A DNA stretch of 64,000 nucleotides from Blastocystis sp. Blastoise (taxonomy: Eukaryota; Protista; Bigyra: Opalinata), in assembly GCA_039096225.1 (NCBI GenBank), contig JBBPEB010000024.1, positions 124,001 to 188,000 on the forward strand, written 5' to 3'. A program made the translations under genes and the position numbers. Shown piece by piece: positions 3,170-29,766 of this stretch; within the stretch, counting starts at the first letter, position 1; each line of letters starts with the position of its first letter. A model generated the notes under the pieces. The model was not told where the DNA came from and made no database searches. It worked only from the letters and a program-made list of their open reading frames with translations.

Positions 3170-6100
3170 TTCATTCTTCATTCTTCATTCTTCATTCTTC
3201 ATTCTTCATTCTTCATTCTTCATTCTAATACACTTCTTACTACATCTTTTTCTTCTTTTTTGTATAGATATTAATTTTTCTTTATTTGTTTTCATAACTA
3301 TTACCTCTTCACGAATTCTACTATTATATTTTATTATTATACTTCTAATTATCCTTTCCTTTTCATTCTTCTTCTTCTTCTTCTTATCCTTCTTCTTATC
3401 CTTTCATTCTTATTCTTATTCTTCTTACTTTACGTCTACTACTTATTCTTCTTCACCTGTACATCTTATTCTACTTCTCCTTATTCTCCTTCTTCACTTA
3501 TGTTTCCTTTCTTTTTTTTTCTCCTTGTAAATTTACTTCTCCTTGTTATTGTCATCTTCTTTTTATTATTCTTAGATATATTTCTCTTATTCTTATTTTT
3601 CTTCTCCTTCTTCAACTTCTTCAACTTCTTCTTTTTCATATATTGTTGTTACTTCTTTTTTTACTTCTTTTTTTACTTCTTATTTTACTTAATATTTTGT
3701 TTCTTATTTAGTTTTTCCATATATCTCACTTTCTCCTTCTTATTCCACGTCTCCTTATTTTTTAATTTCTCTTTCTTATTTTTATTACTATCCTCGTGCT
3801 ACTTCTCGCTTTCCTTCATATGCGACTTTCTCATTCTCCTTTCCCTTCATCATACTATTCATATTTTCATTCTGCTTATCTAGTTACTTTTACTTATTTT
3901 TTTTATTGTAATTTCTATTTTACTTCTCATTCCTATTTTCCTTCTTTTAATTGATATTATTCTTTAATTATTATTATTTTTACGCTTATTCTCGTTCTGC
4001 TTCGCCTTCTACTTATTCTTGTCTCCTGTTAATTCTTCTTCTACTTCAGCATTTCATTCTTAATTTCCTTCTTATTCTAATTCTACTTCTTATTTCTGGT
4101 GTTATTCCTTTGTTTTCATTTCATAAGCCTTAGTGTCTACTTTCCATTTCTCTTTACTATTCACTCAACTTTTACTACTTCTTCATCTTCCACATTTTAT
4201 TCTTATTCACCTTATTTTTACACTCTTATTCTACTTCTATTTCTGCTTGTATTTCTACTTCATTTTTTATTCTTATTCTTATTCATGATATCTTTCTCTT
4301 CTTATTCATGATATCTTTCTCTTCTTATTCATGATATCTTTCTCTTCTTACTTTACTTATACTTCCTAATCATTTCTCTTCTTATTCTACTTCTATTTCT
4401 TGTTCTACAATCTTATTATCATTATCTTTATACTATTCTGCTTCTAGTTAGCCTTAACTTTTTTTCATTCTTCTCCTCCTCCTTTTGTATCTTCTTTTTC
4501 TTATTATTATTATTAGTATTGTCCTTCCATTTCTCATTCTTTTTATTCACTTCTGCTTATCATACTCCTTATTCGTATTCTTCATTTTCTTATTATTTAT
4601 TCTAATTCTTCATCTTATCACTTTCCTTCTTCTTCCTTCTTTTCTTATACTTTTCTATCTTCAATTTATTCTATTATTCTTATTTTCATTCTTATTAAAC
4701 TTATTTTTTATTTCTCCTTCTACTTATTATTATTCTCCTTTATATCTTCTTTCTTCTCCTTCTATTTTCATTTCTCCTTTTTATTCTTCTTATTCCTATT
4801 CTTATTCACTTCATTCTTATTTTTATTGTACTCCTTCCACTTCTAAACTTTCTCTCCTTAATATTCTTCTTTTTATTCTACTATTTATCTCATTTTCCTT
4901 CTACTAACACTTCATATTGTCATCTTTCTTATTTTATTCTTATTCTCATTATACTTATACATATGGTTCTACTCATACTTATTGTTCTCCTTCTACTTCA
5001 TTTATACTTTTACATCTATTCATACTTCTCTTATGGTTCTACTACTACTCTCTTAGTCATATTCTTATTCTTATTGTTCTCCAAATTCTTCTTTTACTTG
5101 TATCTACTTTCTTGTCTAGTTCTCCTTACTCTGCTGGTATACTTCTCACTTTTTATTTATATATATTCTTCTACTTTTGCGTATTCTATTTTCACCAAAT
5201 TCTTCTCACTATCCTTCTATATCTTATTCTAATTCTTACTTTTTCTCCTATTATCTTTCTTTTTTAAACTTCTACTTTTCCTTCTCTTTGTTCTAGTTCT
5301 AGCTTTGGTTCTTCTTCTTCTTCTTCTTCTTCTACTTTTTATCTTCTTCTTATTCCCTATCTTCTCATTCTTTTATATCATCTTTTTTCTCTATATTTTC
5401 TTTTTCTTCTTCTTATTTGTATCGTCATTCTATTTCTTATTCTCATTCCTCTCTTTTTCCTACTATTCTCATCCTATTTCTTCTTTTTCAAATTCTCTGT
5501 CATGTATTCTCAGTTTAAGTCTACTCATTTTCCTTCTGCTTCTCCTTTTTTCATATACTTATTATTTTACATCAAATTCTTCTTTTCCTTTTGTTTCTCC
5601 TTATGTGGTTTATTATTATTCTCCAACATGTTTTTCTTCAACATCATCATCTCCTTTTGCTTCTACTTCTTCTCTTCATTTTCCTTTCTCTTCGTTGTAC
5701 TTCTACTTATCCTTTTTATTCTTATTCCTATTATCTTTCATATTTTCCTTTTTCTTCTCATTCTCACTCTCTTTTTGATATTCTCCTTCTCCTTCTATTT
5801 CTTATTATCGTTCTATTTATATTAGTTCTTGTTCTTCTTATTTTACTTCTCATTCTCTTTCTAATTATATAGTCTCTCTTCCTTTTCTTTATTCTTCTCC
5901 TTCTTTTCACGTTTTTACATCATTATTATTATTTTCATTCCTTTTTTATTCTGTTCTTATTCTATTCCTTATACTTCGTCTTCTTCAGTTTTTTTTCATT
6001 CATTACTTTATTCTTCTATTTCTACTTGTACTTATACTTTTTGTTTACTTGTACTTATATTATTACTTACTTTCATTCTTATTCCAATTTCTACTACTAC

Positions 6101-7840
6101 TACTAGTTCTATTACTACTTGTTATTATTCTTATTCCTATTTCTTTCTACTAGTATTTATTCTTATTCTAATTCTACTTATCATTGTACTCGTGCTTCTA
6201 TTCTTACTTTTATTTATACATGCACGTCTACTTCTACTTTCTTTTCTACTTCTAGTTCTACTTATACTTTCTAGTTTTCCTTCTTCTTCTTCTTCTTGTT
6301 CTTTACTTCTACTACCACTACTTATGACTATTTCTCCTTCTACGTTCACTTCTCCTTTTACATGTACTCGTACTACTATTAATTCTTATTCTTCAATTTG
6401 AACTTCTACTCTTTTTCGTCTACTTTTTATTTTAGTTCTATTATAATTCGATTTCTTCTACTTCTACTTATTCTTCTACTTCTAGTACTTCTTGTTTATC
6501 AACTTATATTCATCATTTTACATCTACTTATACTAGTATAACTTCTTTTTATTATTATTTATATTAGACTCTTTTAATTCTACTCCTTATTCCTATTATA
6601 TTTTTCTTCTATTTCTTCTATTTCTTCTTCTATTTGTACTTATAATTATACTTCATCTATTCTTATTCATATTCTCTTTCTCATTCTTCTATTTATATTT
6701 ATAATTATACTTCATCTATTCGCCTTTTCTTTTTCCTATTTTACTTATACTTTGTTTCTTCTATTTATACATACATAATTGTGCTTCTCCTTCTGCTTCT
6801 AAGTCTAAGTCTAAGTCTATTTACACTACTACTACTTCTACTACTTCTAGTACTTTCTCAGTCAGTTTTTATTCCATTCTTATTCTTATTCTTATTCTTA
6901 TTCTATTCTTATTCTTGTTTTTTCCAGATTCTTCTTTTTTTGCCTTTCTTCTACAGGCTTGTCTATTTCTCATTATTCTACTTGTATGCTTCTCATTTTT
7001 TATTCTTCATATTCTTCTAATTTAACGTATTCTGTTTTATTCTAAATTCGTCTCATTTTGCTTCAATTTTTCTTCTACATCTTATTTATATATTCCTATT
7101 TTCTTACTTATTTTCATTCTACTTTTCATTTCCCTTTATTCTGTTTCTCGATCTACTTCTTCTTCTACTTTATCTTCTTCTTCTCCTTATTCACTATCTT
7201 CTGCTTCTTCTATATCATTTTTTACTCTATATTTTGTCTTCCTCAGTATTCTTTTTATTTGTAGTATCTTTCTTTTTATTTTTGTGATTCCTCTTCTTGT
7301 TCTTATTCTTCTTATTATATTTCTTCTTTTTCAAATTCTTCCTCTCCTCATTTTCATTTAGTTCTTCTTGTTTTCCTTCTGCTTCTTTTTATTTTTGTTA
7401 TTCTTATTTTACTTCACACTCTCGTTTTCCTTCTATTTCTTTTATCTTTCTTATTATCATCCTTTCTATTTTTCTTCAACCTTAGCTTCTCCTTCTGCTT
7501 CTACTCCTTATCTCCATTTTCTTTATACTCCTCCTTATACTTCTACTTATTCTTCTTATTCTCATTCCTATTATCTTTCATGCTTTCCTTTTTCTTATCA
7601 TTTTCAATCTCTTTATTCTATTTCTCATTATTTTTCTTTTTCTTTTTCTTCTATCCATACTTATTAAAGTTTGTTTTTTATTATTCTTTTACTTCTCGTT
7701 CTATTTCTCAATATTTTACTTCTTTTTACTTTTCTTTATTCATCTCATTTCCTCTTCCTCCTTATTCTTCTGTTTCTTCTTTTTTACTACTTCTCCTTAC
7801 TATTATTATTATTATTCTTATATTTACCTTCTTTTCCTTA

Positions 7841-7873
<33 letters not shown>

Positions 7874-9520
7874 TATTTACCTTCTTTTCCTTATACTTCT
7901 TCTACTTCAGCTTCTTTCCTTCTTTCCTTTATTCTTCTATTTATACTTGTTCTTCTACTCATATTTCTACTACTACTACTTACTGTTATTTTTTTCTTCC
8001 ATTTCGACTTCTACACTATTACTAATACTACTTCTCATTCTTCTACTTATATTTCTACTTATATTTCTATTCTACTTCGCTTGTACTCCAACTTCAACTC
8101 TTACTCCTACTTTTGCTTCTACTACTTTTTTATGCTTCTACATCCATTTCTATTACAACTACTTCTTGTTCTTCTTTTTCTATTTCTCTTTCTTCTTCTT
8201 TTTTTTTCATTTTCATTCCATTATTGCTATTCTTCTATTTCTTCTTCTTATTCTCATTCACATTCGTATTATTAGTATTATTTTTTCTTCTTCTACTTCT
8301 TTCATTCTTGTTTCTTCTATTTCATTTCTATATTCTATTTCTCATTCTTCTTCTTCTCTTTCTCATTTTCTTCTTCTTCTTCTTCTTCTTCTACTGATTC
8401 TCATTTTCCTTTTCCATCTATTTCTACCTATTTCTACTTCTGTTTCTACTACCATACTTTTATTTCTTCTTCTTTCTCATTTTATCTCAACTTATTCGTC
8501 TACTTCTCTATCTCCTTTTCAATATTCTTCTTCTCATACTTTTTCTTCTATTGATTCTTTTACTTTTACTTTTACCTTATTCTTGTCCTTATTCTCTTTC
8601 TCCTTTTTCTCTTTTCTTTTCCTTCTTCTACTTCTATAATTTCTTTCTTCTCCCCCTTTTCTTTGTGGTTCTTCTCTTTCTCTTTCTTCTTCTACTTTTT
8701 CTTCTTATAATTTTATTTTTTCATCTTCTTCTCCTTCCTCCTTCTCCTTCTTTTGATTCCTCCTTTTCCTTCTTCTCCTTCTTCTTAATCTTTCTTCTTC
8801 TCCTTCTTCTATAATTTTTCTTCTTCTCCTCCTTCTATAATTTGTCTTCTTCTCCTTTTTCCTTTTGCCATTCTTGTCATTCTTGTTTTTTTTTGTCATT
8901 CTCCTTCCTATTCTTTTTCTTCTCATTCTTCTCCTCCTTCTCTTTCTTCTTCTGTTTATTTTTTCCTTCTTCTCTTTCTCGTTCTTTCTTTCTTATTCTC
9001 CTTCTCTTTGTCATTCTTATCCTTCTTATCCTTCTCCTTCTTATTCATATTTTGATCCTCTCCTTCTATTCTCTTTTTAGTTTCTTCTTTTTCCATTTTT
9101 ATTCACATGCTTTTTCTTCTACTCCCACATATGCTTCTCTTTCTCCGTCTTCTTCGTATTATTATTCTTATGCTTCTACTTCTAATCATTCTCATTCTAC
9201 TTATCCTTACCTTCTATTGATGTTTTCCTTATTATGTTTATTCTTGGTTTATTCTTATTTTCCTTCTTGTTCTCCTTCTCCTTCTCCTTCTTTTTCTTTT
9301 ATTTCTGCCATTCTCTTTTTTTATCGTTCTTCTTGTCATTTCTTTCTCCTATCCTTATCCTTATCTTTGTCCTTTTTATCCTTCTCCTTCTACTTCTTCT
9401 TCTTATCCTTATCCTTATCCTTCTTCTTATCTTTATCCTATCCTTCTTCTTCTGCTCCTTGTCCTTGTCCTTGTCCTTCTCCTTCTCCTTCTTATTCTTG
9501 TCCTCTTTCATTTATTTGCA
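3170..9520. repeat. ~6.3-kb pyrimidine-rich cryptically simple tract (TTC/TTA/CTA/CTC triplet-hexamer mosaic)
   Basis: The plus strand is nearly all T/C/A with very little G. It opens with (TTCATTC)n and contains (TTC)n, (TCCTTA)n, (TCCTTG)n runs. The F/L/S/Y-rich ORFs in all plus frames are compositional artefacts. Confidence 0.9.
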
Positions 9521-9813: not shown

Positions 9814-12085
9814 CTACTTTCTTCTCTTCGAACTATATTCTGATGATTCTACATCTTCAAGTGTAGGAATTGAGGCAATATCAGTTTCTTCATATTTCTC
9901 TTTTTCAGCTTCAACTGCACACTCATTCAAACACTCCAAAGCTGGAATACTGTTCTTTATTTTCCAATACTTATTTTTCAGATAATAAGATGTTATATGA
10001 GAATAGTTAAACTTAGATGGTCGACCTGATTTACGAATTGGATTATTTGGTCCTGTAATATTTATGTGACTTTCTTCTTTCAAGCATGAATCATCTATTC
10101 TTCTATATATAACAAAAAAAAATATTTATATAATATGTATTATATATATCATTACCTATCTACATAATAATTATAATAAGTATTCATATGGTTCTTATAT
10201 GGAATGAAGTATTTGGCAATAGTATTGAAATCGTCAATTCCTTGTTGATTATACGAAACACTGCTATTATACTTTTTATATAGAAGAATAGCATGTATAC
10301 AAGGATAACCTTGGTATTGAAAAATTGAACAAGAACATGTATTCTGTTCAAAATTAATTATGTATTCACGGTTTTCTTCTTCCATTACTAGTCTATATAA
10401 ACCCTTATTTATACTCTTATATGATATCACATTAGAAACAAATATATCAGCCATATCAAACTCTTTTTGAAAGTAAGGAAGAAAGAATGATATATGAGGT
10501 GCCTCTTTTATTTTCAGTTGATAATTAATTGCATGATTATAGATTTCAAACAATACCTTCTGTATAGACATTCCTCTTATGTCACTAATAAGATTATTAA
10601 ATGACTCGGCCAAACTTGAGGCAATGTATCCATATCTGGATACATGAGGTGGTAGATCTATATTATACATATTCTTTCCCCTTTGTGAGAGTATTTGCTT
10701 CTTCTGGTTCTCTGTTATTGAAGAATCATTAATAAGCTTATAGAATTCTTCTTCATCATCAATTAGAATGAGTTGTGATATTAGTCCTATTATTCTTGAA
10801 TTCACATTTGTCATCTTCTTTAGAATATGAAATGCACATGATATATATGTGCATTCAGGAAAGACTACTCCTAGGCTTCCTTTGAGACCTTTGTCCATAT
10901 CTGAGAAAAATGTTATGTTTGTAGTTTTACATGACATGAGTTCAAGTGCTTTTTTCAGATTAGTTTGGAAATCACTCCAGGTAGCTAAACACTCTACAGC
11001 ATATATACCATAAGCAAGAAGAAGTATTTGTCTATTAATAGTAATGGATATAGCAGTTAATATGATATGATCATTCATATACATATGAGTTCCATCCATA
11101 AAGATTACTGCTTTATTTCCCTTCTTATATAATGCTATATTTGATTTAATAGATACAAAAGAATATAGAAACTCATGACTTATTACTTTATTATTCCCTA
11201 CTGCTTTGTTTAATTCTCTATCCATGTTTATTTCTTCATGTATATTCATATTGGAATTATTTCCACTACAAACTGAATCATTTTCAGAATAATTCAGAAC
11301 ACTATCTTCCAAGTTTACTCTGAAAGTTTCATCTTGTTCTAAATGATTATCTACTATATTCTCATCTATATTAGATTGAATATAAGAAGAAGAAGGATAA
11401 GCATTAATATTCTTATATGTATATCCTGGAGGGAGGCAACCATATATAGCATAATTTTCTTTGCTTATTATACTTTTTATAATACATGGTATTTTACTAT
11501 AGTCATTAGTTGACTTAATACCTAATTCTCTTAAGGCGTTTCTTGCTATTTCATATGAAACACTGATATTCTTCTTCTCCAGGAATTGTTTTAACTGAGA
11601 TATTGATTTGAAATACTTGGCTAGATTATTTTCCTTTAAATAACTCACAACATCATTTGAGCTTATATCTTGATTGTATTTATGTGACTTATATTGAATA
11701 AATATACATTTATCAGAAATATCTTTAAATATATTATTAAATCTATCTTCTGTAATTCCTTCATTTTGTTCTTCATAAGAAAACACATTATCTATTGATG
11801 TATCTTCAATATTCAATTCTATATCAATTGTTCTACTTTCTTCATCTTCATGATTATTATCCTTTGATTTATTTATATCTTCTATGACCATTTCAGAATT
11901 TTTACTAGATATGAATGGATCTTCTAAGATAGGAAGAGTTTGGGTATTTGTAGGATTAGAATTAGCATCTGAGCTCCGAGAATTGTGTGTAAAATTGATA
12001 GTTTCATGTATCTCAGCTTCATCTTCATGATTTTGATCATTACTATTACTAGCATCTTTTGATAGAATCATTGGATTAAGACTTA

Positions 12086-12144
<59 letters not shown>

Positions 12145-13168
12145 TTCTTTGCTTCTTTCTATGCATCTCTCTCTATCTCTTCCATCTCTTACTCTCTCAA
12201 TATATATATATATATTAGATATTTTTTTCTATCGCTTTCTCTCTCTCTCTCTATATATATATATCTGTCGTTCTCTCTTTATATATTCATAAATGTTTCT
12301 TTCTTTCATTCTTACTATATATATAATAGAATTTTTCTTTCTTTCTTTCTCTCTGTATATATTATATAATCTTCCTTTCTCTATATATATAGGTGGATAT
12401 TTCTTCTATTACTCTCATACATTGAATTAATATATAACACTTTTCACATACATATACTACTGTATTTCATTTTTTTCTCTCTATATATTTATTTTCCTCT
12501 TTTTCCTTCTTTATTCAATGTATAGATTTCTCTCTCACAATTTATATATTGATATATATATATACCTTATATTAAATTGATGATTTTTAATTCGATTTTT
12601 TATCACTGTATATAATAGAATATTATATACATTATATATTATATTTATATTTAGTTACTTGTCTTAATAATTTGATAATCTATTTTATTTTGTTTGTTAA
12701 GCTTAATGTAAATCATATTAAAACGATTGCATTTCTATATTAATAATAAGTATAAACTATAATAATTAATTAAATAACATACAGTTGAGTCATGATGACA
12801 GTATCTTTTCATTATCCATCCAGAAACGTCGTCACCTTGGAAATGAAGCATAAACGGGCAATCGGAAACACAACATTTGTAAATAATTCTTCCTTTTTCT
12901 GATTTTTGAACCTTAATTGGATATCCTAGCTTTTGCATTTGAATTGAGACATCACTTTTGAGTTTAGACTTATTTTCGTACATAATTTGTACTCCATATG
13001 TTTCTTCATTTTCAAATTTCTTAATTTCTTCACTATTTTTGAAGTCACTGTAATCAACCTTATTCATACAAAAACGATTTTCCACATCTTCTTGTGGCTG
13101 ACTTGAATCAATTGTCTAATTATTAAAAAATAATAATGAAAATGTGTTTTTCGTCTATATACAGACAT
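9814..13168 (-). CDS. Mutator/MULE transposase, 6 exons, apparently intact (~890 aa)
   Basis: Exons 13163-13168, 12783-13115, 12659-12734, ~12567-12605, 10156-12090 and 9814-10102 join in frame through GT-AG introns. Domains seen: N-terminal MuDR/FAR1-type CCHH finger (YKCCVSDCPF...HHD), MULE DDE core (FMDGTH, FFSDMDKGL, CAFH, AESFN), SWIM finger (CSCSIFQYQGYPCIH) and an AT-hook-like KSGRPSK near the C-terminus. Confidence 0.9.
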
Positions 13169-17245: not shown

Positions 17246-17569
17246 GTATATATATATATTATTACTGTTAGTATATATTTGTTATTATTATATTTATTAA
17301 ATACTAGCGGGTGGCATCGGCTTCGCCGATGCTATGTATCTGTTAAGTCTTTGTCTATAATTTAATTTTTTTGCGACACATTTTTATTCAAAAATAAATG
17401 TTTTAAACTAAACAATATGATTGGTAAGAATTATTTAATAACATAAAAAATAAACAAATAAATCATTAAAAATTGAAAATTAAAAACAAATATTCATAAA
17501 CAATAAGACAAAATAAGAAAATTTAAAAACATAAAAAAACATATAACAAAATGCAACAACAAAAATAAA

Positions 17570-20500
17570 TTACAATACTCCATTAAATACACAATTTTTC
17601 GTAAACCATTCATTACTATTTCTGATTAATTGACCTTGATTAATATTATCATTCTTTATAAACATTTTTATACCATGAAAAGAACGTACTCTACTTAAAG
17701 CAACATATAATTGACCATGACTAAATACAGGTCTTTCTAAATAAATACCTACATTTTGAAATGTTTGACCTTGTGATTTATTAATAGTCATAGCAAAAGC
17801 TAATCTGACAGGAAATTGTTTTCTACTTAACTTACATGGTAAATCACTATCATCTACTATAAATTTAATTCTTGGAATCAATACTATATCTTGTCCTTCT
17901 AACATATTATCAGTTCTTACTAATAATTGACTTCTTATTACATTTGGTTTTGTATCTAATACTACTAATCTCGTTCCATTACATAATCCTCTCTTTATAT
18001 CTAAATTTCTTAATAACATAATAACTGAACCTCTTTTCAATTCTAAATTATGAGGTGGACATCCTTGAGGAATTAAACTATTTAAATATTCTGTACTATA
18101 AGCATCTCTTTCATCTATATCTTCTACTTCTTCTGCTAATTCATCATGACTATAATAATGATGAGAACTTGATCTTATCATATTTTGAATTCTTTCATTA
18201 ATTAAATATGCTTGTTCATTTGTTGCACATAATATACAATTTGAAGCTAATTTCTGTCTATATATATCTGTATTTGAATCATTAATAAATTCATGAAATA
18301 TCTCTTCACCTATATTCTCATCACAAATACATTCTCTTGGAATATGTACTTTATCTTTTGATAATAATCTTAATTTATTATTACATCTCTCACCATTTCC
18401 TATCTTCAATAAGAATTCTTTAAATTCTATTTCATTTGCATTTGCTCTCATATTTTCTGTCAATTGAAATTGATTAAATTCATTCCAAATATCTAAATAT
18501 TTAATACATAAAGGAACTATATCAGCTTCTTTTCCATGAGCTACTACTGGTAAACATTGTCTAAAATCTCCACCTAATACTATTGTTTTACCTGCAAATG
18601 GAATATCTATCTCATCATTATATAAGAATCTTAATAATCGATCAACTACTTTTAAAGCATATTTAGAAGCCATAGGAGCTTCATCCCATATTATTATTTT
18701 ACATTTCTTAATTTGTTCTGCTCTTGGAGATCCTCTTGAAATAGAAGAAGAAGAAGATTCATTTAATTCAAAAGGTAATCCAAATTGTGAATGAGATGTT
18801 TTTCCTCCACATAATAAAGTAGCTGCAATACCTGTCCATGCAACTGCTATCACATCATCTATATTATTTCTTATTGATTTAATTATTGTATTATAAAGAA
18901 ATGTTTTTCCAGTTCCTCCTGGTCCATCTATAAAAAACATATTATTTCTATGAGGTTCATTATTATTCACTGATTCCATTATTGATTCATATACTCTTCT
19001 TTGTCCTTCATTCAATAAACTTATATTTCTTTCTGCTATTCTATGATCTTCTTCAAAATTAATTCCTTCGGATTCATAATCTATCATATTAGTATTATTA
19101 TCAAATTGTGGTAAATTAGTACTTTGATATCCTCCATTATGTTTATTTGTATCTATAACACTTCTTATATGATTTAATGCTCTAGGTATACAATATTCTT
19201 CTATTATTCTATTCACTTCATTATCTTCTGAATCTAATACATATGCATCTTGTCTATCTATACTTATATATTCATTTATATATTGATGAAAGAAATCATC
19301 TATCATATCATTCCTATAAGTATTCCAAATAGATAATGGATCAGTAATAGGATAATAAGAACAAAGTAAACCAAATAATTGTCTTAATTGCCAAGGAGTA
19401 GCATCTATTACTTCATTTGCAAGAATATCATAATATTCTGTATCATCTACTAATAATCCTCTTGCTATACAGGATTCTCTATATGTATTATATATTTGAC
19501 CTTCATAACATTTTAAATCATCAAAACTTAATGGACGACTTACATGTAATAAAAGTATTCTTAAACAAAATAAATTATCATTTGTAGGATCCATATAAGG
19601 AAGTCTTCCTATTACTTTATTATTTCTTCTTCTATGATTCCATTTCTTTAATTTTGAATCATATGTATAATATTTAGGAAATTCTATATAAGTTAAAATA
19701 GAGGGTTCATCCATTGTTCCTCTTGATTCTTCATTTATATATAAATCATTCATTTTAAAATATGCTGTTAACATTGTATCTTGATTCATTATTCTATCTA
19801 AAGCTCTTTCTTCATCTCCTTCCACATAATATACAGTTCTATCATTCTCATCATGAATATCTAAAGTAATTACACTCACATTACAATATTTTATTGGAAA
19901 GCCATATATTCTCCACATAGCTTCAGGAGCTGATAAATATCTTCCTTTTAAATAAGATTTCATTTCATTTGGTATTTCTATTTCATTTATATTTGAATTA
20001 TTTGGATTATTATTATTAGTATTATTATTAGTATCTTCTCTTGCTATTTCTGCATTAATAGAATCATGTCCTTTAAAAGCATATTTAAATATATATTTAG
20101 GACTTCTTACTGAAGAACATACTTCTACATTAATATGGCAACCTATTCTTAATGATAAATATGGATTATATGGAACTACCCATCTATTATCTAAAGTATT
20201 ATTTACATTTGATTGTCTACCTATTACATATACTCTACCATTATCTCTTCTTCTATAATTTGGATATCCATCTTCATTTATTGTAGTTTCATTTCTATAA
20301 TCTTTTGGAAATTTCTTTGAACAATATTGTTGACCATTTATTTCTTTCATACATTGAGATGTTCTTGTATGAGGACCATGCATATTCATTGAAGTAATAA
20401 TTTCATATAATCTTGGATTCTTTATAGGATCAGGAATTTCTGCACATATATAGGAATCTATATCTTCAGGAGTTCTTAATTTATATTCATTCTCTAAAGT

Positions 20501-23500
20501 AATTAAAATATGTGCATGAGGCATTCCTCTCTTCTGATATTCTATTGAATAACATAAACATTTTACTTCTCCAAATACTTTAAAATTTGTTATCAAATGA
20601 GTTAAGATTTTCAATTTTATATAAAATACTCTATCTACTATATCAGGTCTCATCCAAGGTTGTTGACCTTCTTCTAATGATTCTAAGATTTCTGGTCAAT
20701 TTGGATTGCAAGTCATGGTTATAAATAAATCTGGTTTACCATAAGCTCTTACAATAGCCATTGTTTCTAAATAGGAATTCTTCATATATCGAGGACCACC
20801 TACAAAACTTGATGGAATAATAACTGCTTTTCCCATTCTACTTCTTATATATTCATCACTAAATCCATTTCGTATCATCTCATTCACTGTATCTCGAAAT
20901 ACAGAATATTTCTCTGATCTTAATTTTGTTTGATTATTTGCTATAAATAATAATCTTGAATATTCTATTTTTGTAGCTGCATCAACCATAAATTGTAATA
21001 ATAATTTTTCAAATAATAATAAATAATTCTTATGATTAGGATGTCTTGCATATAATAAATAAGAATAGAATTCTCTTAATGAAATAGTAGGTATAGTATA
21101 AAATTCATTTCCTAAAATATCTAATGGAAATCCTCTTTCTGATCTATTTCTAAAAATTGGAATAATTCTCATAGATTTTGAATCATCTCCATTACTATCA
21201 TTATTCTCTGTATGATTACTATTTATTCTATAATTATTTCTATTATTTAATTCATTTTCTACTTCTTTTATTATTTCATTCTCATTATTATTATTATTAG
21301 TTGTTGTTCTTGTAGAAATATTTCTATTATTATTATTATTATTATTTTGACGATTTAAATGTAATTCAGAATTATGTATAATATTAGAAGTAGATTCTAA
21401 ACTCCATAATGGTAATCCATAAGGAAACATTAATGGATATATTAAAGGATCACAAAAAGGATTATTATAGCTAAGATTTGTTATTTGTTGTTCTGATATA
21501 TTTTCATTATTATTTTCATTTTCATTATTATTTTCATTATTATTTTCATTATTATTATCATTTCTTCTTCTTCTTCTTGGATAACATGAAAGATTAATAT
21601 TTGGTAAACCTTCATCATTTTGTTTTGGTATAATCATAGCTATTTCATTTGTTGTAGTAGGAGCATTAAATCTTCTCCTATCATCATAATTACTTATTTT
21701 AAATTGTAATTTTAAATTTACTTGTGAATAAGTAGTATTATTTATTCTTCTTGATTCTGTTACTTGTTCATGTAATGTTTTAAAAGATTCATAAATTTTA
21801 TTATTATTTCTTATCATAGAATCAATACTTAATAATAAATCAGAAGATAATTCTGAAAACATACTATTTCCATTTCGAATATGAAGAGCTTCTTCTTCAT
21901 CATAAATATATATTTGATTAAAAGAAGGAGGAGAATTATCAGAAGGATATAAATCACTCATAGAATGATATACATTACCATGAACTCTATAAAAATATGG
22001 TCATGGACCATTCATTCTTGTTACTACATTAGAACATGACATAGAAGCAAAAGCAAAAGCATTATTATATCTTCTTATCTCATTTCTAAATAATTTATTA
22101 TTTGTTGTCTGACTCTTTAATTGATTTAATAATTCATTTGGAAGATTTATAGGTGATTCTACTTTCACTTTCCCATTATTACAACACATTGTATAATTTG
22201 AATTTCTTGTAATGATATAATCATGATCTCCTTCATAAAAATAAAATGAATTTCGTGCTCTAGAAGACTCTGTATTATACTGTAAGTGTGAAACATATTT
22301 ATTAAAATTATAGTTTGCTCTTTCTGCTTCAAAATGAATAGCTTCACAATGAATACAAACATGATTCATTTTACCTATATTATAATATTCATATTTATTA
22401 TTTCTATGAATATCTCTTTCATTCTCTTCTATTATTTGTTCTCCATTTCCTATACATAATATAATAATAGTTTTATTATCATAATGAAAGAATTATAATG
22501 ATAATATAATATTAAGCATACTTAATTTAATACATGCTTCACAATTTTCAAATCTTATTACAATAGGAATATTGTTATTATTTTCTCCATTATTATTTTC
22601 ATTTTGATTATCTATATCTATATCGTTATTATTTGTAGAGTTTATTGGCTGTATTTGCAAAATAGGATTATTAGTAGTATTAGGAGGAATAATAGGTGTG
22701 AAATCACTATCTGAACTTGAATCATTATCTGAAGTAGAAGAATCAAAATTAATTCTTCTTCTATGATTATTTATTTTTGCTGATAATAAATTATTATTAT
22801 TAGGATTTTGAATAGGAGATATTTGATAATAATTTAATATATCTAATATTGATGATCTTGGTAGAGGAGGAATAATAGAATTATTATTATTATTATTATG
22901 AGAAGAAGAAGAAGAATTAATAATTCTTGAATCAAGAGGAGATAATCTAGGAGGTGTTATAATAGGTGATAATCTAGGAGGTGTTATAATGAGAGAAGTA
23001 GAAGGAAATACTATTTGATTATTTGTATTAGAATTTGGTGTATTATGTATAGATGGAGTATGATTATTATTGCTATTATTATCTGATAGAATATCATTAT
23101 TGTGTTGATTATGTAAAGGAGTTATAGGATTATTTAATATAGTAGGTTGTGTATTATCATTTGTATCATTATTTTCAAAAACAAAAGTAGAATTAAAACT
23201 ATCATCAACTATTGATTGAGACATATTTTCATTGTTGTTATTATTTATGTCAGTTTCTATAAAATCTGTTTCATTAATTAATGTTTGAGCAATATTTTCA
23301 TTATTTAAATTTGTATAATTATTTAAATTTGATTCAATAAAATTTGTTTCACTAATTAATGTGCCGATTGCATTATTAATAGATAAGTTTGTATAATTAT
23401 TTTGAGTTGAAGTAACACTTGAAATTAGAGAAGAAGAAGATATAGTTTCTATATAGTTTTGTTGTATTTGATGTTGTTCACTTATTTGATATACATTATT

Positions 23501-23658
23501 TAATGAATTATTTGTATTGAATAATGAATTATCTTGATTTAAATCATTTTGACTTTCGTCTAATATTTGATTATTTCTCTTTTTTGATTTGTGAGTATTC
23601 AAAAAATTTCCAAATATATCTCTTCTTTTAAGAGAATTAGATTGTTTTCGTTTTATCC
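17570..23658 (-). pseudogene. Helitron RepHel (HUH replication initiator + Pif1-family SF1B helicase) with two in-frame TGA codons
   Basis: Motifs seen: Zn finger CIHC...CC, Helitron-like N domain, HUH (EYQKRGMPHAHIL), Y2 (KYIFKYAFKG), and helicase motifs GPGGTGKT, IWDEAPM, GDFRQCLP, GLCNGTRL, FAMTINKSQGQT, HGQLYVALSR. The four ORF pieces form one frame via intron 22450-22521 and TGAs at 22001-22003 and 20696-20698. Start codon unresolved. Confidence 0.92.
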
Positions 23659-23860
23659 CTATAGTATTACATATAATTAGTTTATATAAGAATGTAATTA
23701 AATATGTATTATTATCTTAAAAATATATACATATTTAAATTATTATCTTCATTATATTTATATAAAAAAATATTTAACCAAACAAAAAGTAAGTTTAAAA
23801 AGAAAAAAAAGTAAATAACAATACAAATCTAACAAAATATAAAATAACAAAACAAAGCTC

Positions 23861-24980
23861 TTAATAATAATCAAGAGGAGATAAAGGACAAATAGGTGAA
23901 GTAGGAGGTGAAACCTCTCTATCACTATAAGGAGGACTTGATAGATCCTCTTCATCCTCTTCTTTATCATTTTTATTATTATTTGATAAAAGAACTATTA
24001 TAATATTTTAATTTATATATATATTACATACCTGAGTGTTTTTCTTTATTACTGGATAATTCTTTAGTTTTATTTGCAAATAGAGTTGTATTATCTTTGT
24101 ATATAAATCTATTAATAACTTCTGAGTCATCGTTACCTATTTATATAAACTATTTCTATTAAAAATCATACTATCACAATTAACCGAGAATAGTTTACTC
24201 TCAAAGAATTGTTTTTCAATATTATTACTAAAATGACTATTTTCTAAATAAAAATATATTAAAAATAGTTAATATTAAAATGTACCTTCGCTTCCTTTAT
24301 AATTTAAACAAAAGCAAGAAGAGTGAAATTCGAATATGTTCTCTATTCTCTTGTACTCTATGTATATAAGAAAATATAAAACGTTTAGTCAAATTGAAAC
24401 AAACATAATACAAAAAATAATAATAGCATAGCATCACTCTTAGTGATATGCTATTATGGAAAAGAAACAAAATATATAATAATAAGTTTCTAATCAATAT
24501 CAAATAAATATTTATTTATATCGTTGATATATATTAAATTTTTCTAACCTTAGACTATACTGAATACTCAATATTATAAATAGATGAGATTCTTATTATA
24601 TAGGTTAATATTTAATACATAACACAAAATAATAAATAAATAAATGATATCAAGTATAACAAATTATTATATATTTAAAAACAGAAAAAAATTAAAAAAC
24701 TCAAGTAAAACAAAAATAAAATTAAATAAAATACTTTTACAATTTATATTAAACATTGCAGATTCTTTCCTGCATTTTTCACACTTAGTGAGACAACATT
24801 CATCCTCTTCTTTACCTAATATATATATAGATATAATTGAATTTAGTACTATATACTTTTTACTAATGCAGTTTCATTTGAATTATTTCTATTTTTCATA
24901 GAACGAATTTCTAAATATATAATTATAAGTAATATTAATACATACTTTGATTTAAATAATGTTTTGACCTTTTAGAATCT

Positions 24981-25027
<47 letters not shown>

Positions 25028-25871
25028 TTGAACAGATTTCAGTATCTGCTATATCGTCTATATTGTATATTAGTAAATAAAATGATTATATACTATTCAT
25101 TATTGATAAATCAACATCTATATATATATATATGTATTATAATATAATCATAATATATAAATATATAAGTAATATAATTTAGAATGATATGATATGTACC
25201 AACTGGATTTGAAAGAATAGAAGAAGCAACTATATATGTAATGATTATTATATATTACGGCATATATTATAATATTTGTACCAAAAATATATAATATAAT
25301 AAAAAATCATACCATTTGGTATTGATTGAATAGAAGAAGTACCTAGATAAAAGAATTTTTATTTTATATTATATTTTAATACATATTATAATATAAAAAC
25401 TATATATATAATATATATTTACTGTTTAATGAATTAGGGATCAATGAGGAGTCTATAAATAGAAAAAGAATAAGTATATATATAGCATATATAATATATA
25501 TAATATGTATATGTACTATTCATAGAATTAGGTATCAATGAGGAGTCTATAAATAAATAATAAATTAGTATATATAGTATACATATAATATGTATATAAA
25601 ATGTATAATTACTGTTTGTGGAATTAGGTATCGATGAGAAGTCTATATATAAATGAGATAAGATATTGCAGTATAATATTTAATAAATATTTTATAATAT
25701 ATAAAATATAATATTTTATATATACTATTTAATGAAGAAGCGCTCGATGAAGGGTCTATATATATAATAATATATACATTATAACGTAATATTAAATATA
25801 TATATAAATTATATATATATGTACTATTAAGGAAAAAAGGTTATTTAAAGAACATATTTGTAGTAATGAAT

Positions 25872-25907
<36 letters not shown>

Positions 25908-26600
25908 TTTATAGAATATATTGTCGATAAAGAATCTATAAAAGAAAGATATCATTATATATTATAAAATAATATTTAAATAATATTTATAATATATATA
26001 TACCTCCCAAAAAAGAAGGAATATTTGAATAATCTACATATATAAAATAATTATTACTCATAAGATATAATATATATAATATGTATATGTACTATTCATG
26101 GAATTCGGAATCGAACTGGAGTCTATAGAAATATAGAATAGTATATATAATATATATAGTATATATATGTTTGATTAACATTATTCATATATAGATTCTT
26201 ACTCAAATTATGTACAAAAATAATAATTTAATATTGTAATAATATTATATTTTAAAGAGTTGAAAACGAAAATCAAAAATAATATATATATTTAATTTAG
26301 AAAATATAAACTGTTTAAAAATTCAATTATCTTGTGTTAAAATAAAGAATTATATAATAATAGAAAAAGAAATATTAATTTTTAATCAATTAAAAGATAA
26401 ACCAATTATTAATAAAAATATATTATATTACTAAATATAATAATAATATAAATGTATATCTACCTTCTTGATTGTATTGTGACAACAAAGACAATAACGG
26501 GCATTCCATATCTAAACTTGAGTCTAAATAATTAAAAAAATCTCAATAAAATTAATAATATACCATCGTGACTATTATAATTTCTTTTGGATCTAGTCAT
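23861..26600 (-). CDS. 20-exon micro-exon gene inside the Helitron (~324 aa: Ser/Asn-rich 10-aa repeats, Cys/His cluster, acidic Ser/Pro tail)
   Basis: ATG at 26600. Exons (plus coordinates): 26564-26600, 26464-26523, 26093-26122, 26004-26033, 25906-25935, 25726-25755, 25613-25642, 25517-25546, 25423-25452, 25313-25342, 25200-25229, 25094-25117, 25028-25057, 24946-24981, 24857-24910, 24735-24815, 24286-24357, 24172-24243, 24032-24136, 23861-23994. All introns are GT-AG and phase 1, and the frame is open to TAA at 23861-23863. Confidence 0.75.
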
Positions 26601-29600
26601 CCTTTTTTGAGAAGCAACTCTATAACAGGAAATAAAATAAAAATGAGACCATTCCCATTATGACTTTTGTCTCAAGAATCTTCAAAATTCTGAATCTTCG
26701 AGATATTTTGAGATTTTTGAGATTTTTTGAGATTTTATGGGACACAAAAAATGAACAGCCAATTATTATACTTTTCATATTTTGACTTTTTTATTTGTGT
26801 TTCTAAAAAAATAAAATTTATAAAAATTATAAATAATTCTATTGGTTGATAAAATAAGCCAATTGTTTTATTTCTTTGTATTTTCTATTATTAAAAAAAT
26901 AATTAAAAACAGAAGTTTGTGTTTTGTTTATACTTTATATATTACCTTTCTATTTTTTATATAAACACAACAGTTTTTTTAATAAATATATAAATAAAAT
27001 AAATATTCTTTTCTGACTATTAAATTTTTATTTAAAAGGATTCTGACAACAAATTGACAAAAATATTTTTAATAGACTTTTAATAATGGCTTAAAAACAT
27101 ATCAGTGGCCATTTCACTCAAGAAAACAGCAACTGTTTGAAAGATTGAACACAACAATGTAATTCACTCATTTTTTGATACTATTAATTTTTACTGTTTT
27201 AATAACTAATGCCTCTAAAAGACTTACCATTATTAGAAAAACACTTTAGTAACATGTTTGTAAAACATATTACAAAGAATGGGTCAGAATGTCAAACTAT
27301 TTTTATTTTTTAATTGATTTGAATAGATATATTTAATATATATGTTGTTTTAAAAACATTTAGTAAAAAAAATTTATAACTATTACTTTACAATTCAACA
27401 ATTAAAAAAAAACAATTCAAGTTGACTCTTTAAAATAATTTTTAAAACTAACTATCAACAGTTTAACAAATTATTTTGGTTTTGATTAGAATCATCTAGT
27501 TATGAAAGACTTTTAAGAGACTTTACCATTTTGAAATGTTTTGCATCAAGATGAAATCGTCTATAATTTTGTCATTCAGTAATATTTGTTATACACAGTT
27601 ACTAATAATCAAAATTGACTTGAATCTCTACTATGTAAAAATTAATTGTAAATGAATTCACTCTTCAAAACAAATATTGAAAAATAGGTTTAATTTCTTT
27701 ATTTATATTTCATTATAAAACTATATTTTATCATTTTCAATTGAATTTAAAAAACATAGAGTCAGAATGGAGACATATCTTCAAAATACAAAACTATTTT
27801 AAAACTAATTTTTAATTATAAATATCTATATAACAGTATCCAACTCATTTTTACACTTAATGTTTAAAATTAATAGTGATAAGTCACAATTATACTGTTT
27901 TCAACTTTTCTATATAAATATAACCAACACTTGTTTAAAGTCTTATATTATACATGTATCTAGTAATTGAATGTTAACCTGTAAAATAACTCATCAAAGT
28001 ATGTTTACATCAGCCAATCTGTTTGTTAACTGTCTTTTAAAAAGCCAATATTTATATATTATATGTCCAAAGTCTTAATGTATTTGTAAATAGTACTTAT
28101 ATATTTTAAAATATTCTCATTCAACTCAAAATTAAATAAAAAAACAAAAAACAAAAACAAAAAACTCTAAAAAAGACATAATATTTATTCATTTAATAAC
28201 TCTGTCAATTTTTAATTAATTAAATTTTTTTTCATATACTTTTAATAAGAATAGCATAACATATATAAATTCTATTATATTTTAACTATATATTATAAAT
28301 TGATGACCGAAATCGGCCTGAGTTAAAACAATAAAAACACAATTTTTGAAAAACTATGAAATTTGTTTCTCATTTTTGACCCCGAGATTCAACGATATTT
28401 TATATTTTGATTTGATATATGTATACAATGATATATTATCTATTTATATAAGTTTAAAAAAGTGTGTTAGGAGGACTTTTTTTGGTGTAAAGCCACAATT
28501 AACTTTTTTTGACCTTTTTCAAAAAGTCTTTAAAGACAAAAAAAATCATAGTGTAACATATATCGCATCCTTACACCAAATATGAAGTCCAGAGTCGAAA
28601 TTAAAGTGGTCGAAATCTGCCGATACACCAACTTTGTTGTTAAAAATATACGATAATGGCATATTTGTGTATAGTCCAGGTTACTATATTATATAATAAA
28701 GTCAGAATTTGATTTAGAAAAACTTCACTGGATACATATCCAGTCATCTTTGCTTTAAAGTTATAAAAGTGTGTTGTATGAGTGGCGATTTTTGTCTAAA
28801 CATAAAATATAAAGTCAGATAGTCTTTAGAAAGAGTTGAATGATTTCGATATGTTTTTGACCTCAGTTATTTTGTAATCTGTTCATATATTTCAAGAGGT
28901 GTCATGTAGTCATACAAATAAATGAAGTCTAGAATTGAAATAAAAGAAAATTATTGGCAGAACACACAATTGAAGTTTTTTGTTACTTTTTCAACATGCT
29001 AAAAACTGGTTTTAATCACTTTTAGGATGTTTTCATGACTAATAATGATGACTGGAGTTGTTTCTATAAAATTTGAAAGGGGTCAAAAGAGAATGTGCTC
29101 GATATCTCAAAACTTTGTGGATGAAATTTTTTAAACTCTTTATACTTATTGGTTATACGACTCATTCTATGTATATAGGTTGATTATACGTTGTTAAAGT
29201 CACTTTTAAAAATGATTATTTGTTTAATTGTCTTTTCAAAATCTAAAAGTAGTTTATTTGTTTAACCTGATATTTAAAATATATAAAAATTATTTTATTA
29301 AAAATATATATGTTCTTATGTAAACAAACAAATAAAATAAAATAAATAAAAAAAATTAATAAAATTCATTAAATGAAAAAATTTCTTTTGTAAAATTATT
29401 ATAAAAAAAGAAATTTTCTATAAAATAAAATTTATAAGAAAAAGTAAATTTTTAGAAACAATTTAAAATTCTATAAAGAATGAAAGAATTCTATAAAGTG
29501 TACGACAGTTTTTATTGGATAAAAACTCAAATTTTGAATTTTATTGCATTTTAGTGGCCCAGTCGGTTAAGTCACTTCTTTGTAGGACCGTTTTAGGCCT

Positions 29601-29766
29601 TTAGACGTGGAATTTTTGAAAATTTTAAAAGCGCGTCATAATACGTTTTTTATCTAGATTCTAAATCTTTTATCAGTGTAACATAGATACGTGACACAAA
29701 AAAGTAATCGGTCTATTTATATCAGTACAATTTCGTGCTTACTTATCCCTTTTATATATAAGATAG

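What the first reader, a model, noticed from the sequence alone, without database searches (positions are those of the whole stretch)
23861..26600. Helitron-borne micro-exon gene: ten 30-nt symmetric exons, all 19 introns in phase 1
Seen: upstream of RepHel, on the same strand, lies a gene the ORF track cannot show. Between 25028 and 26122 are ten exons of exactly 30 nt plus one of 24 nt, several being mutual repeats (xSSSIPNSMN, xFSSIPNSTN, xSSLIPNSMN, xSSLIPNSLN, xTSSIQSIPN). A decayed extra unit sits at ~25825-25854. Every other internal exon (36, 54, 60, 72, 72, 81, 105 nt) is also a multiple of 3, so almost any skipping pattern keeps the frame. The spliced product is open from ATG to TAA (~324 aa): Ser/Asn repeats, a Cys/His cluster (CCLTKCEKC...NC...FHSSCFC) and an acidic Ser/Pro tail, with no signal peptide. 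Established: tandem symmetric micro-exons that generate isoform diversity define schistosome MEG genes, and Helitrons capture and carry genes. Inference: a transposon-carried combinatorial-splicing module built by exon-plus-intron tandem duplication, possibly a tunable disordered linker on a Zn-finger accessory or anti-silencing protein. I am not aware of this architecture in a Helitron but cannot search the literature.
Basis: partly seen in the sequence, partly recalled or inferred. Interest (0 to 1): 0.82.

Follow-up and report, generated by a model that had tools for sequence, protein, structure and literature searches.

The report
Micro-exon leader of a Helitron transposase
In a gut protist of tortoises, a rolling-circle transposon opens with a string of tiny, frame-preserving exons whose number grows and shrinks from copy to copy, and these exons most likely supply the start of the transposase itself as well as a shorter protein, an unusual gene layout whose splicing still has to be shown with RNA.

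Summary
An unconstrained parser rebuilds the 20 exons, 19 phase-1 introns and 324 aa. Host chaperonin genes have 25% phase-1 introns, so this is not genome background. The genome is Blastocystis sp. Blastoise. The gene lies inside an HLE1 Helitron (17304-29763) and was found only in that family (15 places). Non-repeat exons show dN/dS 0.2-0.3. Three subfamilies expanded different units (30, 30 and 27 nt; 10-25 copies); length and splice sites are kept, and in the 27-nt type amino acids are not. Revision: this is probably not a stand-alone gene. The transposase frame begins at a conserved phase-1 acceptor with no conserved ATG, and two other Helitron families splice similar all-phase-1 exon runs into RepHel. 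Best reading: one transcript, giving a short protein (terminal exon 20) and a long RepHel with a disordered, length-variable N-terminus. The Cys cluster is not conserved, so no zinc finger. It is not a MEG: no signal peptide, purifying selection. No RNA run was listed, so splicing and skipping are unshown; precise intron losses in a sister family support splicing. The scan noted the same architecture on other Helitron copies of this genome.

The parts
17304..29763 (-). HLE1 Helitron, family 1 of this genome (16 RepHel copies at 98-100% identity)
29745..29763 (-). 5' TC terminus, preceded by A of the target site
   Evidence: flank differs from the C4 copy
17304..17330 (-). 3' hairpin and CTAG, followed by T of the target site; identical in 11 loci with different flanks
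26564..26600 (-). exon 1 with ATG; inferred start of both products
26464..26523 (-). exon 2 (60 nt), conserved in types A, B and C
25028..26122 (-). exons 3-13: ten 30-nt and one 24-nt symmetric phase-1 micro-exons (26122-26093, 26033-26004, 25935-25906, 25755-25726, 25642-25613, 25546-25517, 25452-25423, 25342-25313, 25229-25200, 25117-25094, 25057-25028); Ser/Asn/Pro-rich
25825..25854 (-). decayed unit: donor left, no AG, in-frame stop
24946..24981 (-). exon 14 (36 nt, basic); acceptor disturbed in this copy by a private T>G at 24984
24735..24910 (-). exons 15-16 (54 and 81 nt); basic; the Cys cluster is specific to type A
24032..24357 (-). exons 17-19 (72, 72, 105 nt): the conserved part, probably a small folded domain of unknown type; exon 19 ends in a canonical phase-1 donor
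23861..23994 (-). exon 20: terminal exon of the short product (acidic, Ser/Pro tail, conserved TAA); holds one weak phase-1 GT conserved in types A, B and C
23781..23860 (-). T/TG-rich tract like the one after the RepHel stop; putative 3'-end signal inside the long intron
22522..23658 (-). exon 21 (1137 nt, phase 1 to phase 1): first RepHel coding exon; conserved acceptor at 23660-23659, no conserved ATG
17570..22449 (-). last RepHel exon (Helitron_like_N, PIF1); two premature stops in this copy

Best explanation
The micro-exons are the 5' part of the Helitron's transcription unit. A transcript starting at exon 1 either ends in exon 20, giving a 324-aa protein here (380-600 aa in other subfamilies), or splices from a phase-1 donor (exon 19's canonical donor, or the weak GT inside exon 20) to the acceptor at 23659. 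That second route gives RepHel (about 2290 aa) its start codon and a long, mostly disordered N-terminus with basic patches and one small conserved domain. Exon-plus-intron units of about 80-100 nt expand and contract like a minisatellite, by slippage or unequal exchange helped by TA-repeat introns. Only symmetric exons of the resident phase survive, because they leave the frame intact whether duplicated, skipped or silenced. The symmetry therefore most likely gives tolerance to copy-number change and mis-splicing, not a repertoire. The short product is most likely a nuclear regulator or helper of transposition, by analogy (from memory) with the P-element repressor/transposase and CACTA TnpA/TnpD splice pairs. 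Shown: anatomy, element limits, coding selection, unit turnover, absence of a RepHel ATG. Inferred: the splice into RepHel, the two products, every protein function.
For: The RepHel exon 21 acceptor is conserved in all 15 copies read. In-frame Met positions differ among copies (145, 26, 147, 196), and in two type-B copies there is none before the next intron. No ATG-bearing phase-1 exon lies within 230 nt upstream. pN is below pS from the first codons (0.058 against 0.443 over the first 25 codons, A vs B), and all indels are multiples of 3. Family 2 (53% RepHel identity) parses as 23 consecutive phase-1 introns running into the RepHel N-terminal exon with canonical donors. Family 3 has the same layout, with a canonical phase-1 donor and acceptor read by eye. 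NCBI models WA158_003519 and WA158_003494 fuse these exons to RepHel, while WA158_006929 and WA158_006970 end at exon 20 (these are predictions, not proof). The tail after exon 20 matches the tail after the RepHel stop (T 0.66 vs 0.68; 6 vs 7 TGT per 80 nt; host introns 0.57 and 1.7). Unit turnover: type C has 113 units, all 27 nt, 108 with GT and 110 with AG, spacers 36-136 nt; substitutions are 6 synonymous/15 non-synonymous against 20/44 possible; units that lost the donor carry extra changes. Type B has 25 units in 4 variants. One type-A copy has three extra units of exon 3. Family-2 copies lack 5 and 3 introns exactly at GT..AG.
Against: No RNA run was listed, so no junction is observed. 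The only conserved donor inside exon 20 is weak, and skipping a terminal exon has not been seen. RepHel could start from its own promoter at a non-AUG codon or at the Met in the last exon. Cross-family homology of exons 16-19 is only suggestive: colinear exon pairs score p 0.001-0.03 among 221 shuffled comparisons, but hhalign gives 0.1%. No functional evidence exists for either product.
Confidence: 0.62

Rival explanations
1. A stand-alone accessory gene upstream of a separately transcribed RepHel, as the first reader modelled it (like the cap genes of Pleurotus Helitrons).
For: Conserved TAA and 3'-end-like tract after exon 20; two NCBI models end there; in several type-C copies the array is interrupted by other sequence while RepHel stays open.
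Against: RepHel exon 21 is under coding selection upstream of any ATG and begins at a conserved acceptor; families 2 and 3 run into RepHel.
Confidence: 0.15
2. A MEG-like device: selection keeps the symmetric micro-exons in order to produce many isoforms by combinatorial skipping, for example to tune linker length or escape host recognition.
For: All exons are skippable in frame; 37-54% of the short coding sequence lies in exons of 36 nt or less; three independent expansions; type-A units differ in sequence.
Against: Type B units are near-identical and type C units show neither constraint nor excess amino-acid change; no signal peptide; long exons of 72-1137 nt are symmetric too; symmetric exons in disordered proteins arise commonly by tandem duplication (PMC3632108).
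Confidence: 0.13
3. A captured host gene carried passively.
For: Helitrons capture genes (PMC11417382); earlier scan notes report host BTB/LRR-like families with phase-1 symmetric exons (not tested here).
Against: Exon searches hit 15 places, all in family-1 Helitrons; no relative among 1.84 billion representatives except models from this genome; continued purifying selection inside the element.
Confidence: 0.06
4. A mere non-coding minisatellite that mimics exons.
For: Type B arrays are near-perfect 83-nt tandem repeats in which spacer and exon are equally conserved.
Against: In types A and C the spacers vary freely while unit length and GT/AG stay; 2 of 113 type-C units have a stop in the coding frame against 112 in another frame; flanking exons have dN/dS 0.2-0.3.
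Confidence: 0.04

Closest known systems
HLE1 (canonical) Helitrons with RepHel (PMC11417382)
   Same: [quoted passage not shown]
   Different: RepHel is preceded by, and probably spliced to, about 20-45 all-phase-1 symmetric exons with expanding micro-exon arrays. No RPA, OTU or EN domain. No paper holding this architecture was found in the library.
Schistosome micro-exon genes (MEGs; PMC8293314)
   Same: Runs of symmetric exons of 36 nt or less, exon duplication, transposon-rich setting.
   Different: No signal peptide, purifying rather than elevated dN/dS, carried by a transposon, no homology, skipping unshown.
Disordered proteins assembled from tandemly duplicated symmetric exons (PMC3632108)
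   Same: Low-complexity protein, symmetric exons, internal tandem duplication. This is the general rule the locus follows.
   Different: Described for human host genes; here it is inside a mobile element, with turnover visible between near-identical copies.
Pleurotus HELPO1 cap genes (PMC4289320)
   Same: Helitron-restricted genes of unknown origin with no copy outside the element; introns in RepHel.
   Different: The cap genes lie downstream of RepHel, are separate genes, and have no micro-exon arrays reported.
P element repressor/transposase and CACTA TnpA/TnpD (from memory, not tested)
   Same: One transposon transcript giving a short and a long product by alternative processing.
   Different: Unrelated transposases; the regulatory role of the short product here is only an analogy.

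Membership tests
HLE1 Helitron | 5' TC terminus | tested here: met
   29763; shared start and different flank in the C4 copy
HLE1 Helitron | 3' hairpin plus CTRR, followed by T | tested here: met
   identical in 11 loci
HLE1 Helitron | RepHel (Helitron_like_N plus PIF1) | tested here: met
   broken by two stops in this copy, open in most others
Schistosome-type MEG | composed mainly of symmetric exons of 36 nt or less | tested here: inconclusive
   37% (A), 48% (C) and 54% (B) of the short coding sequence
Schistosome-type MEG | signal peptide, secreted or surface protein | tested here: not met
   highest 19-residue hydropathy in the first 35 aa is -0.15
Schistosome-type MEG | elevated dN/dS | tested here: not met
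   0.2-0.3 in non-repeat exons; about neutral in type-C units
Schistosome-type MEG | isoform diversity by exon skipping | not testable with these tools
   no RNA run was listed
PHD/RING zinc finger | conserved set of eight Cys/His ligands | tested here: not met
   the exon-16 Cys cluster is absent in types B and C; no Pfam hit
Captured host gene | homologue outside the element | tested here: not met
   short, low-complexity queries limit the sensitivity

The most novel reading that the evidence does not exclude
Helitrons of this lineage control their own transposase through a splice choice at the end of a cassette of symmetric micro-exons (short regulator versus full RepHel), and regulated skipping plus array expansion tunes the length of a disordered N-terminus under selection, for example against host silencing. 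This would be a transposon-encoded combinatorial-splicing module.
Probability: 0.15. Interest if true: 0.85.

Novelty: new variant of a known kind. Interest (0 to 1): 0.6.

Why it matters
Helitron transposase genes are usually treated as one long ORF, and HELIANO looks for extra domains with plain ORF calling (PMC11417382), which cannot see exons of 27-30 nt. Here three Helitron families carry 10-45 same-phase exons in front of RepHel. Near-identical copies catch exon birth (tandem exon-plus-intron duplication), exon death (donor loss, then decay) and precise intron loss in progress. That makes a compact natural test bed for the symmetric-exon model of gene growth. If the splice into RepHel is confirmed, it also gives a candidate autoregulatory switch for Helitrons. 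The ingredients are each known; their combination in a Helitron was not found in the papers searched.

Tried and rejected
RNA evidence: the look-up of sequencing runs listed none. Exons were searched one by one by reference, and public NCBI records that already join some exons (P0077, P0125) were searched by id. The fold of the full joined type-A domain was therefore left out. Pfam, word search, the exhaustive search and the ESM Atlas gave no relative outside this genome. AlphaFold models were poor (pLDDT 35 and 56) and fold searches uninformative. The profile test of family 1 against family 2 homology failed. Rejected: a genome-wide phase-1 bias; a parser artefact; a zinc finger; reading the T-rich tract as the Blastocystis DGE motif, which PMC10690189 finds not enriched in tortoise isolates. 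The first DNA request was over size; smaller ones worked, but only parts of some copies were read.

Full report
Setting. The window is G000:C23:124001-188000 of a 33.3-Mb, 34-contig assembly. RepHel hits named Blastocystis sp. Blastoise lie on contigs of 1,380,664 and 1,322,594 nt, the lengths of C14 and C15. Size and N50 match the Russian-tortoise isolate Rus-B (33.3 Mb, N50 1323 kb; PMC10690189). The finding lies inside a canonical HLE1 Helitron on the minus strand, 29763 to 17304, with a TC start and a hairpin plus CTAG end that is identical in 11 loci with different flanks. Sixteen RepHel copies are 98-100% identical (family 1); two more families are at about 53% and 42%.

Observation. A parser with no phase constraint recovers the same 20 exons, 19 phase-1 introns and 324 aa. 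It gives mixed phases on 32 other tiles of the window and 43/17/8 introns in phases 0/1/2 for nine host chaperonin genes. The pattern is therefore neither an artefact nor genome background. This copy is decaying: a private T>G at 24984 puts a TAG 2 nt before the exon-14 acceptor, and RepHel has two premature stops.

Distribution and variants. Exon-by-exon searches find 15 places, all in family-1 Helitrons. There are three types. Type A (four copies) has ten diverged 30-nt units, thirteen in one copy through a fresh triplication. Type B (two copies) has 25 near-identical 30-nt units on an 83-nt period, plus several other short exons. Type C (nine copies) has 17-25 units of 27 nt where the array was read whole and is interrupted by other sequence in five copies. 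The RepHel core is 97.5% identical between types, while the 5' coding region is 65-81%.

Selection. Non-repeat exons have dN/dS about 0.2-0.3, with bootstrap pN/pS 0.28-0.54 for A against B or C, so the gene is coding in the phase-1 frame. The repeat units behave differently. In type C all 113 units are 27 nt, 108 keep GT and 110 keep AG, and spacers vary from 36 to 136 nt. Only 2 units have a stop in the coding frame against 112 in another frame, but substitutions are near neutral at the protein level (6 synonymous and 15 non-synonymous, against 20 and 44 possible). Units that lost the donor carry extra changes. Length and frame are kept; sequence is not.

The main revision. Downstream of exon 20, the RepHel frame starts at an acceptor (23660-23659, phase 1, with a branch-point-like motif in most copies) that is conserved in all 15 copies read. 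The exon is 1137 nt and symmetric. Its first codons are under purifying selection and its indels are multiples of 3, yet in-frame Met positions differ among copies and are absent in two type-B copies, and no ATG-bearing phase-1 exon lies in the 230 nt upstream. RepHel therefore needs a start from further upstream, and every donor of the micro-exon gene fits. Family 2 parses as 23 consecutive phase-1 introns leading into the RepHel N-terminal exon, and family 3 shows the same layout with a canonical donor. Exon 20 nevertheless looks like a real terminal exon: its TAA is conserved and it is followed by a T/TG-rich tract like the one after the RepHel stop. Public gene models show both forms, but they are predictions. 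The simplest reading is one transcription unit with a short and a long product.

Evidence for splicing. None is direct. Indirectly, a family-2 copy on C16 lacks five introns exactly at GT..AG, with 3 mismatches in 3876 aligned bases. A copy on C20 lacks three, two of them shared, and most copies keep them. Whether this is cDNA-templated loss in the cell or a polishing artefact from RNA reads (the methods name DNA polishing plus one unspecified short-read round), it implies that those introns are spliced. It concerns the sister family, not this gene.

Protein. It is Ser/Asn-rich, with basic patches in exons 14-16 and at the start of exon 21, no signal peptide and no Pfam match. The Cys cluster is specific to type A, so a PHD/RING finger is rejected. 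Exons 17-19 are the conserved core and may match the last exons before RepHel in family 2 (same order, sizes 72/72/99-105 against 72/75/117, shuffle p 0.001-0.03 for the first and third pair, not significant for the middle one; not confirmed by hhalign). The low-confidence model is strand-helix-hairpin with no useful fold match. No relative was found outside this genome. My joined spliced model was not searched or folded.

Mechanism. Shown: tandem exon-plus-intron units are gained and lost between copies, and only symmetric phase-1 exons persist. Inferred: symmetry is the filter that lets an unstable, TA-microsatellite-rich array sit upstream of a transposase without breaking its frame; the choice between exon 20 and the 23659 acceptor sets the ratio of a short nuclear regulator to RepHel. 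Combinatorial skipping remains possible but is not needed, and would yield little sequence diversity in types B and C.

Comparison and verdict. The element is an HLE1 Helitron (all features tested were met; PMC11417382). The gene resembles a schistosome MEG only in exon geometry and fails two defining features (PMC8293314). It follows the known link between disorder, exon symmetry and tandem duplication (PMC3632108). No paper with this architecture in a Helitron was found, within the limits of the library. First-stage readers of this scan noted the same architecture on other Helitron copies of this genome; those notes are not independent evidence. Verdict: a real, coding, new variant of Helitron gene organisation; interest 0.6, higher if RNA confirms the splice switch.

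Noticed in passing
L038 (C16:795900-802900) and L056 (C20:34300-37600) against L036: Family-2 Helitron copies lack five and three introns precisely; scan notes report the same between other near-identical duplicates in this genome, so it is either frequent cDNA-templated intron loss or an assembly artefact.
   Followed up: partly
L004/L006 (C15, about 562110-562205): A 96-nt insertion in exon 17 of one type-A copy has CACTA-like terminal inverted repeats and a 3-nt target duplication: a small CACTA-type MITE.
   Followed up: partly
window 24734-24358 and L035 about 5520-5985: Intron 16 is long (377-473 nt) and T-rich at its start, and holds hairpins (-14.5 kcal/mol at 24470-24400 in type A; different ones in type C). 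It could be a second 3'-end site or a structured element.
   Followed up: partly
L051, L052, L053, L054, L055: Five of nine type-C copies have the micro-exon array interrupted or cut by other sequence, probably nested elements, while RepHel stays open in several.
   Followed up: partly
L015, L016, L017, L008: Mosaic copies: type-C arrays combined with type-B-like exons 15-16 or exon 21, which points to recombination between subfamilies.
   Followed up: no
L049 about 1395: One 27-nt unit with intact splice sites carries an in-frame stop, so that copy must skip it or is dead.
   Followed up: no
window 26015; L002, L005: A 1-nt difference in a T run of exon 4 does not follow the copy tree; probably a homopolymer assembly error.
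   Followed up: no
L037 about 1450-2150: The family-3 Helitron has a tandem repeat of about 60 nt inside the 1.4-kb intron between its micro-exon run and RepHel.
   Followed up: no
window 10152-13085: MULE transposase with SWIM finger; the window is a nest of transposons (MULE, Tc1-like, others).
   Followed up: no
window 3170-9520: 6-kb strand-asymmetric pyrimidine tract, unexplained.
   Followed up: no
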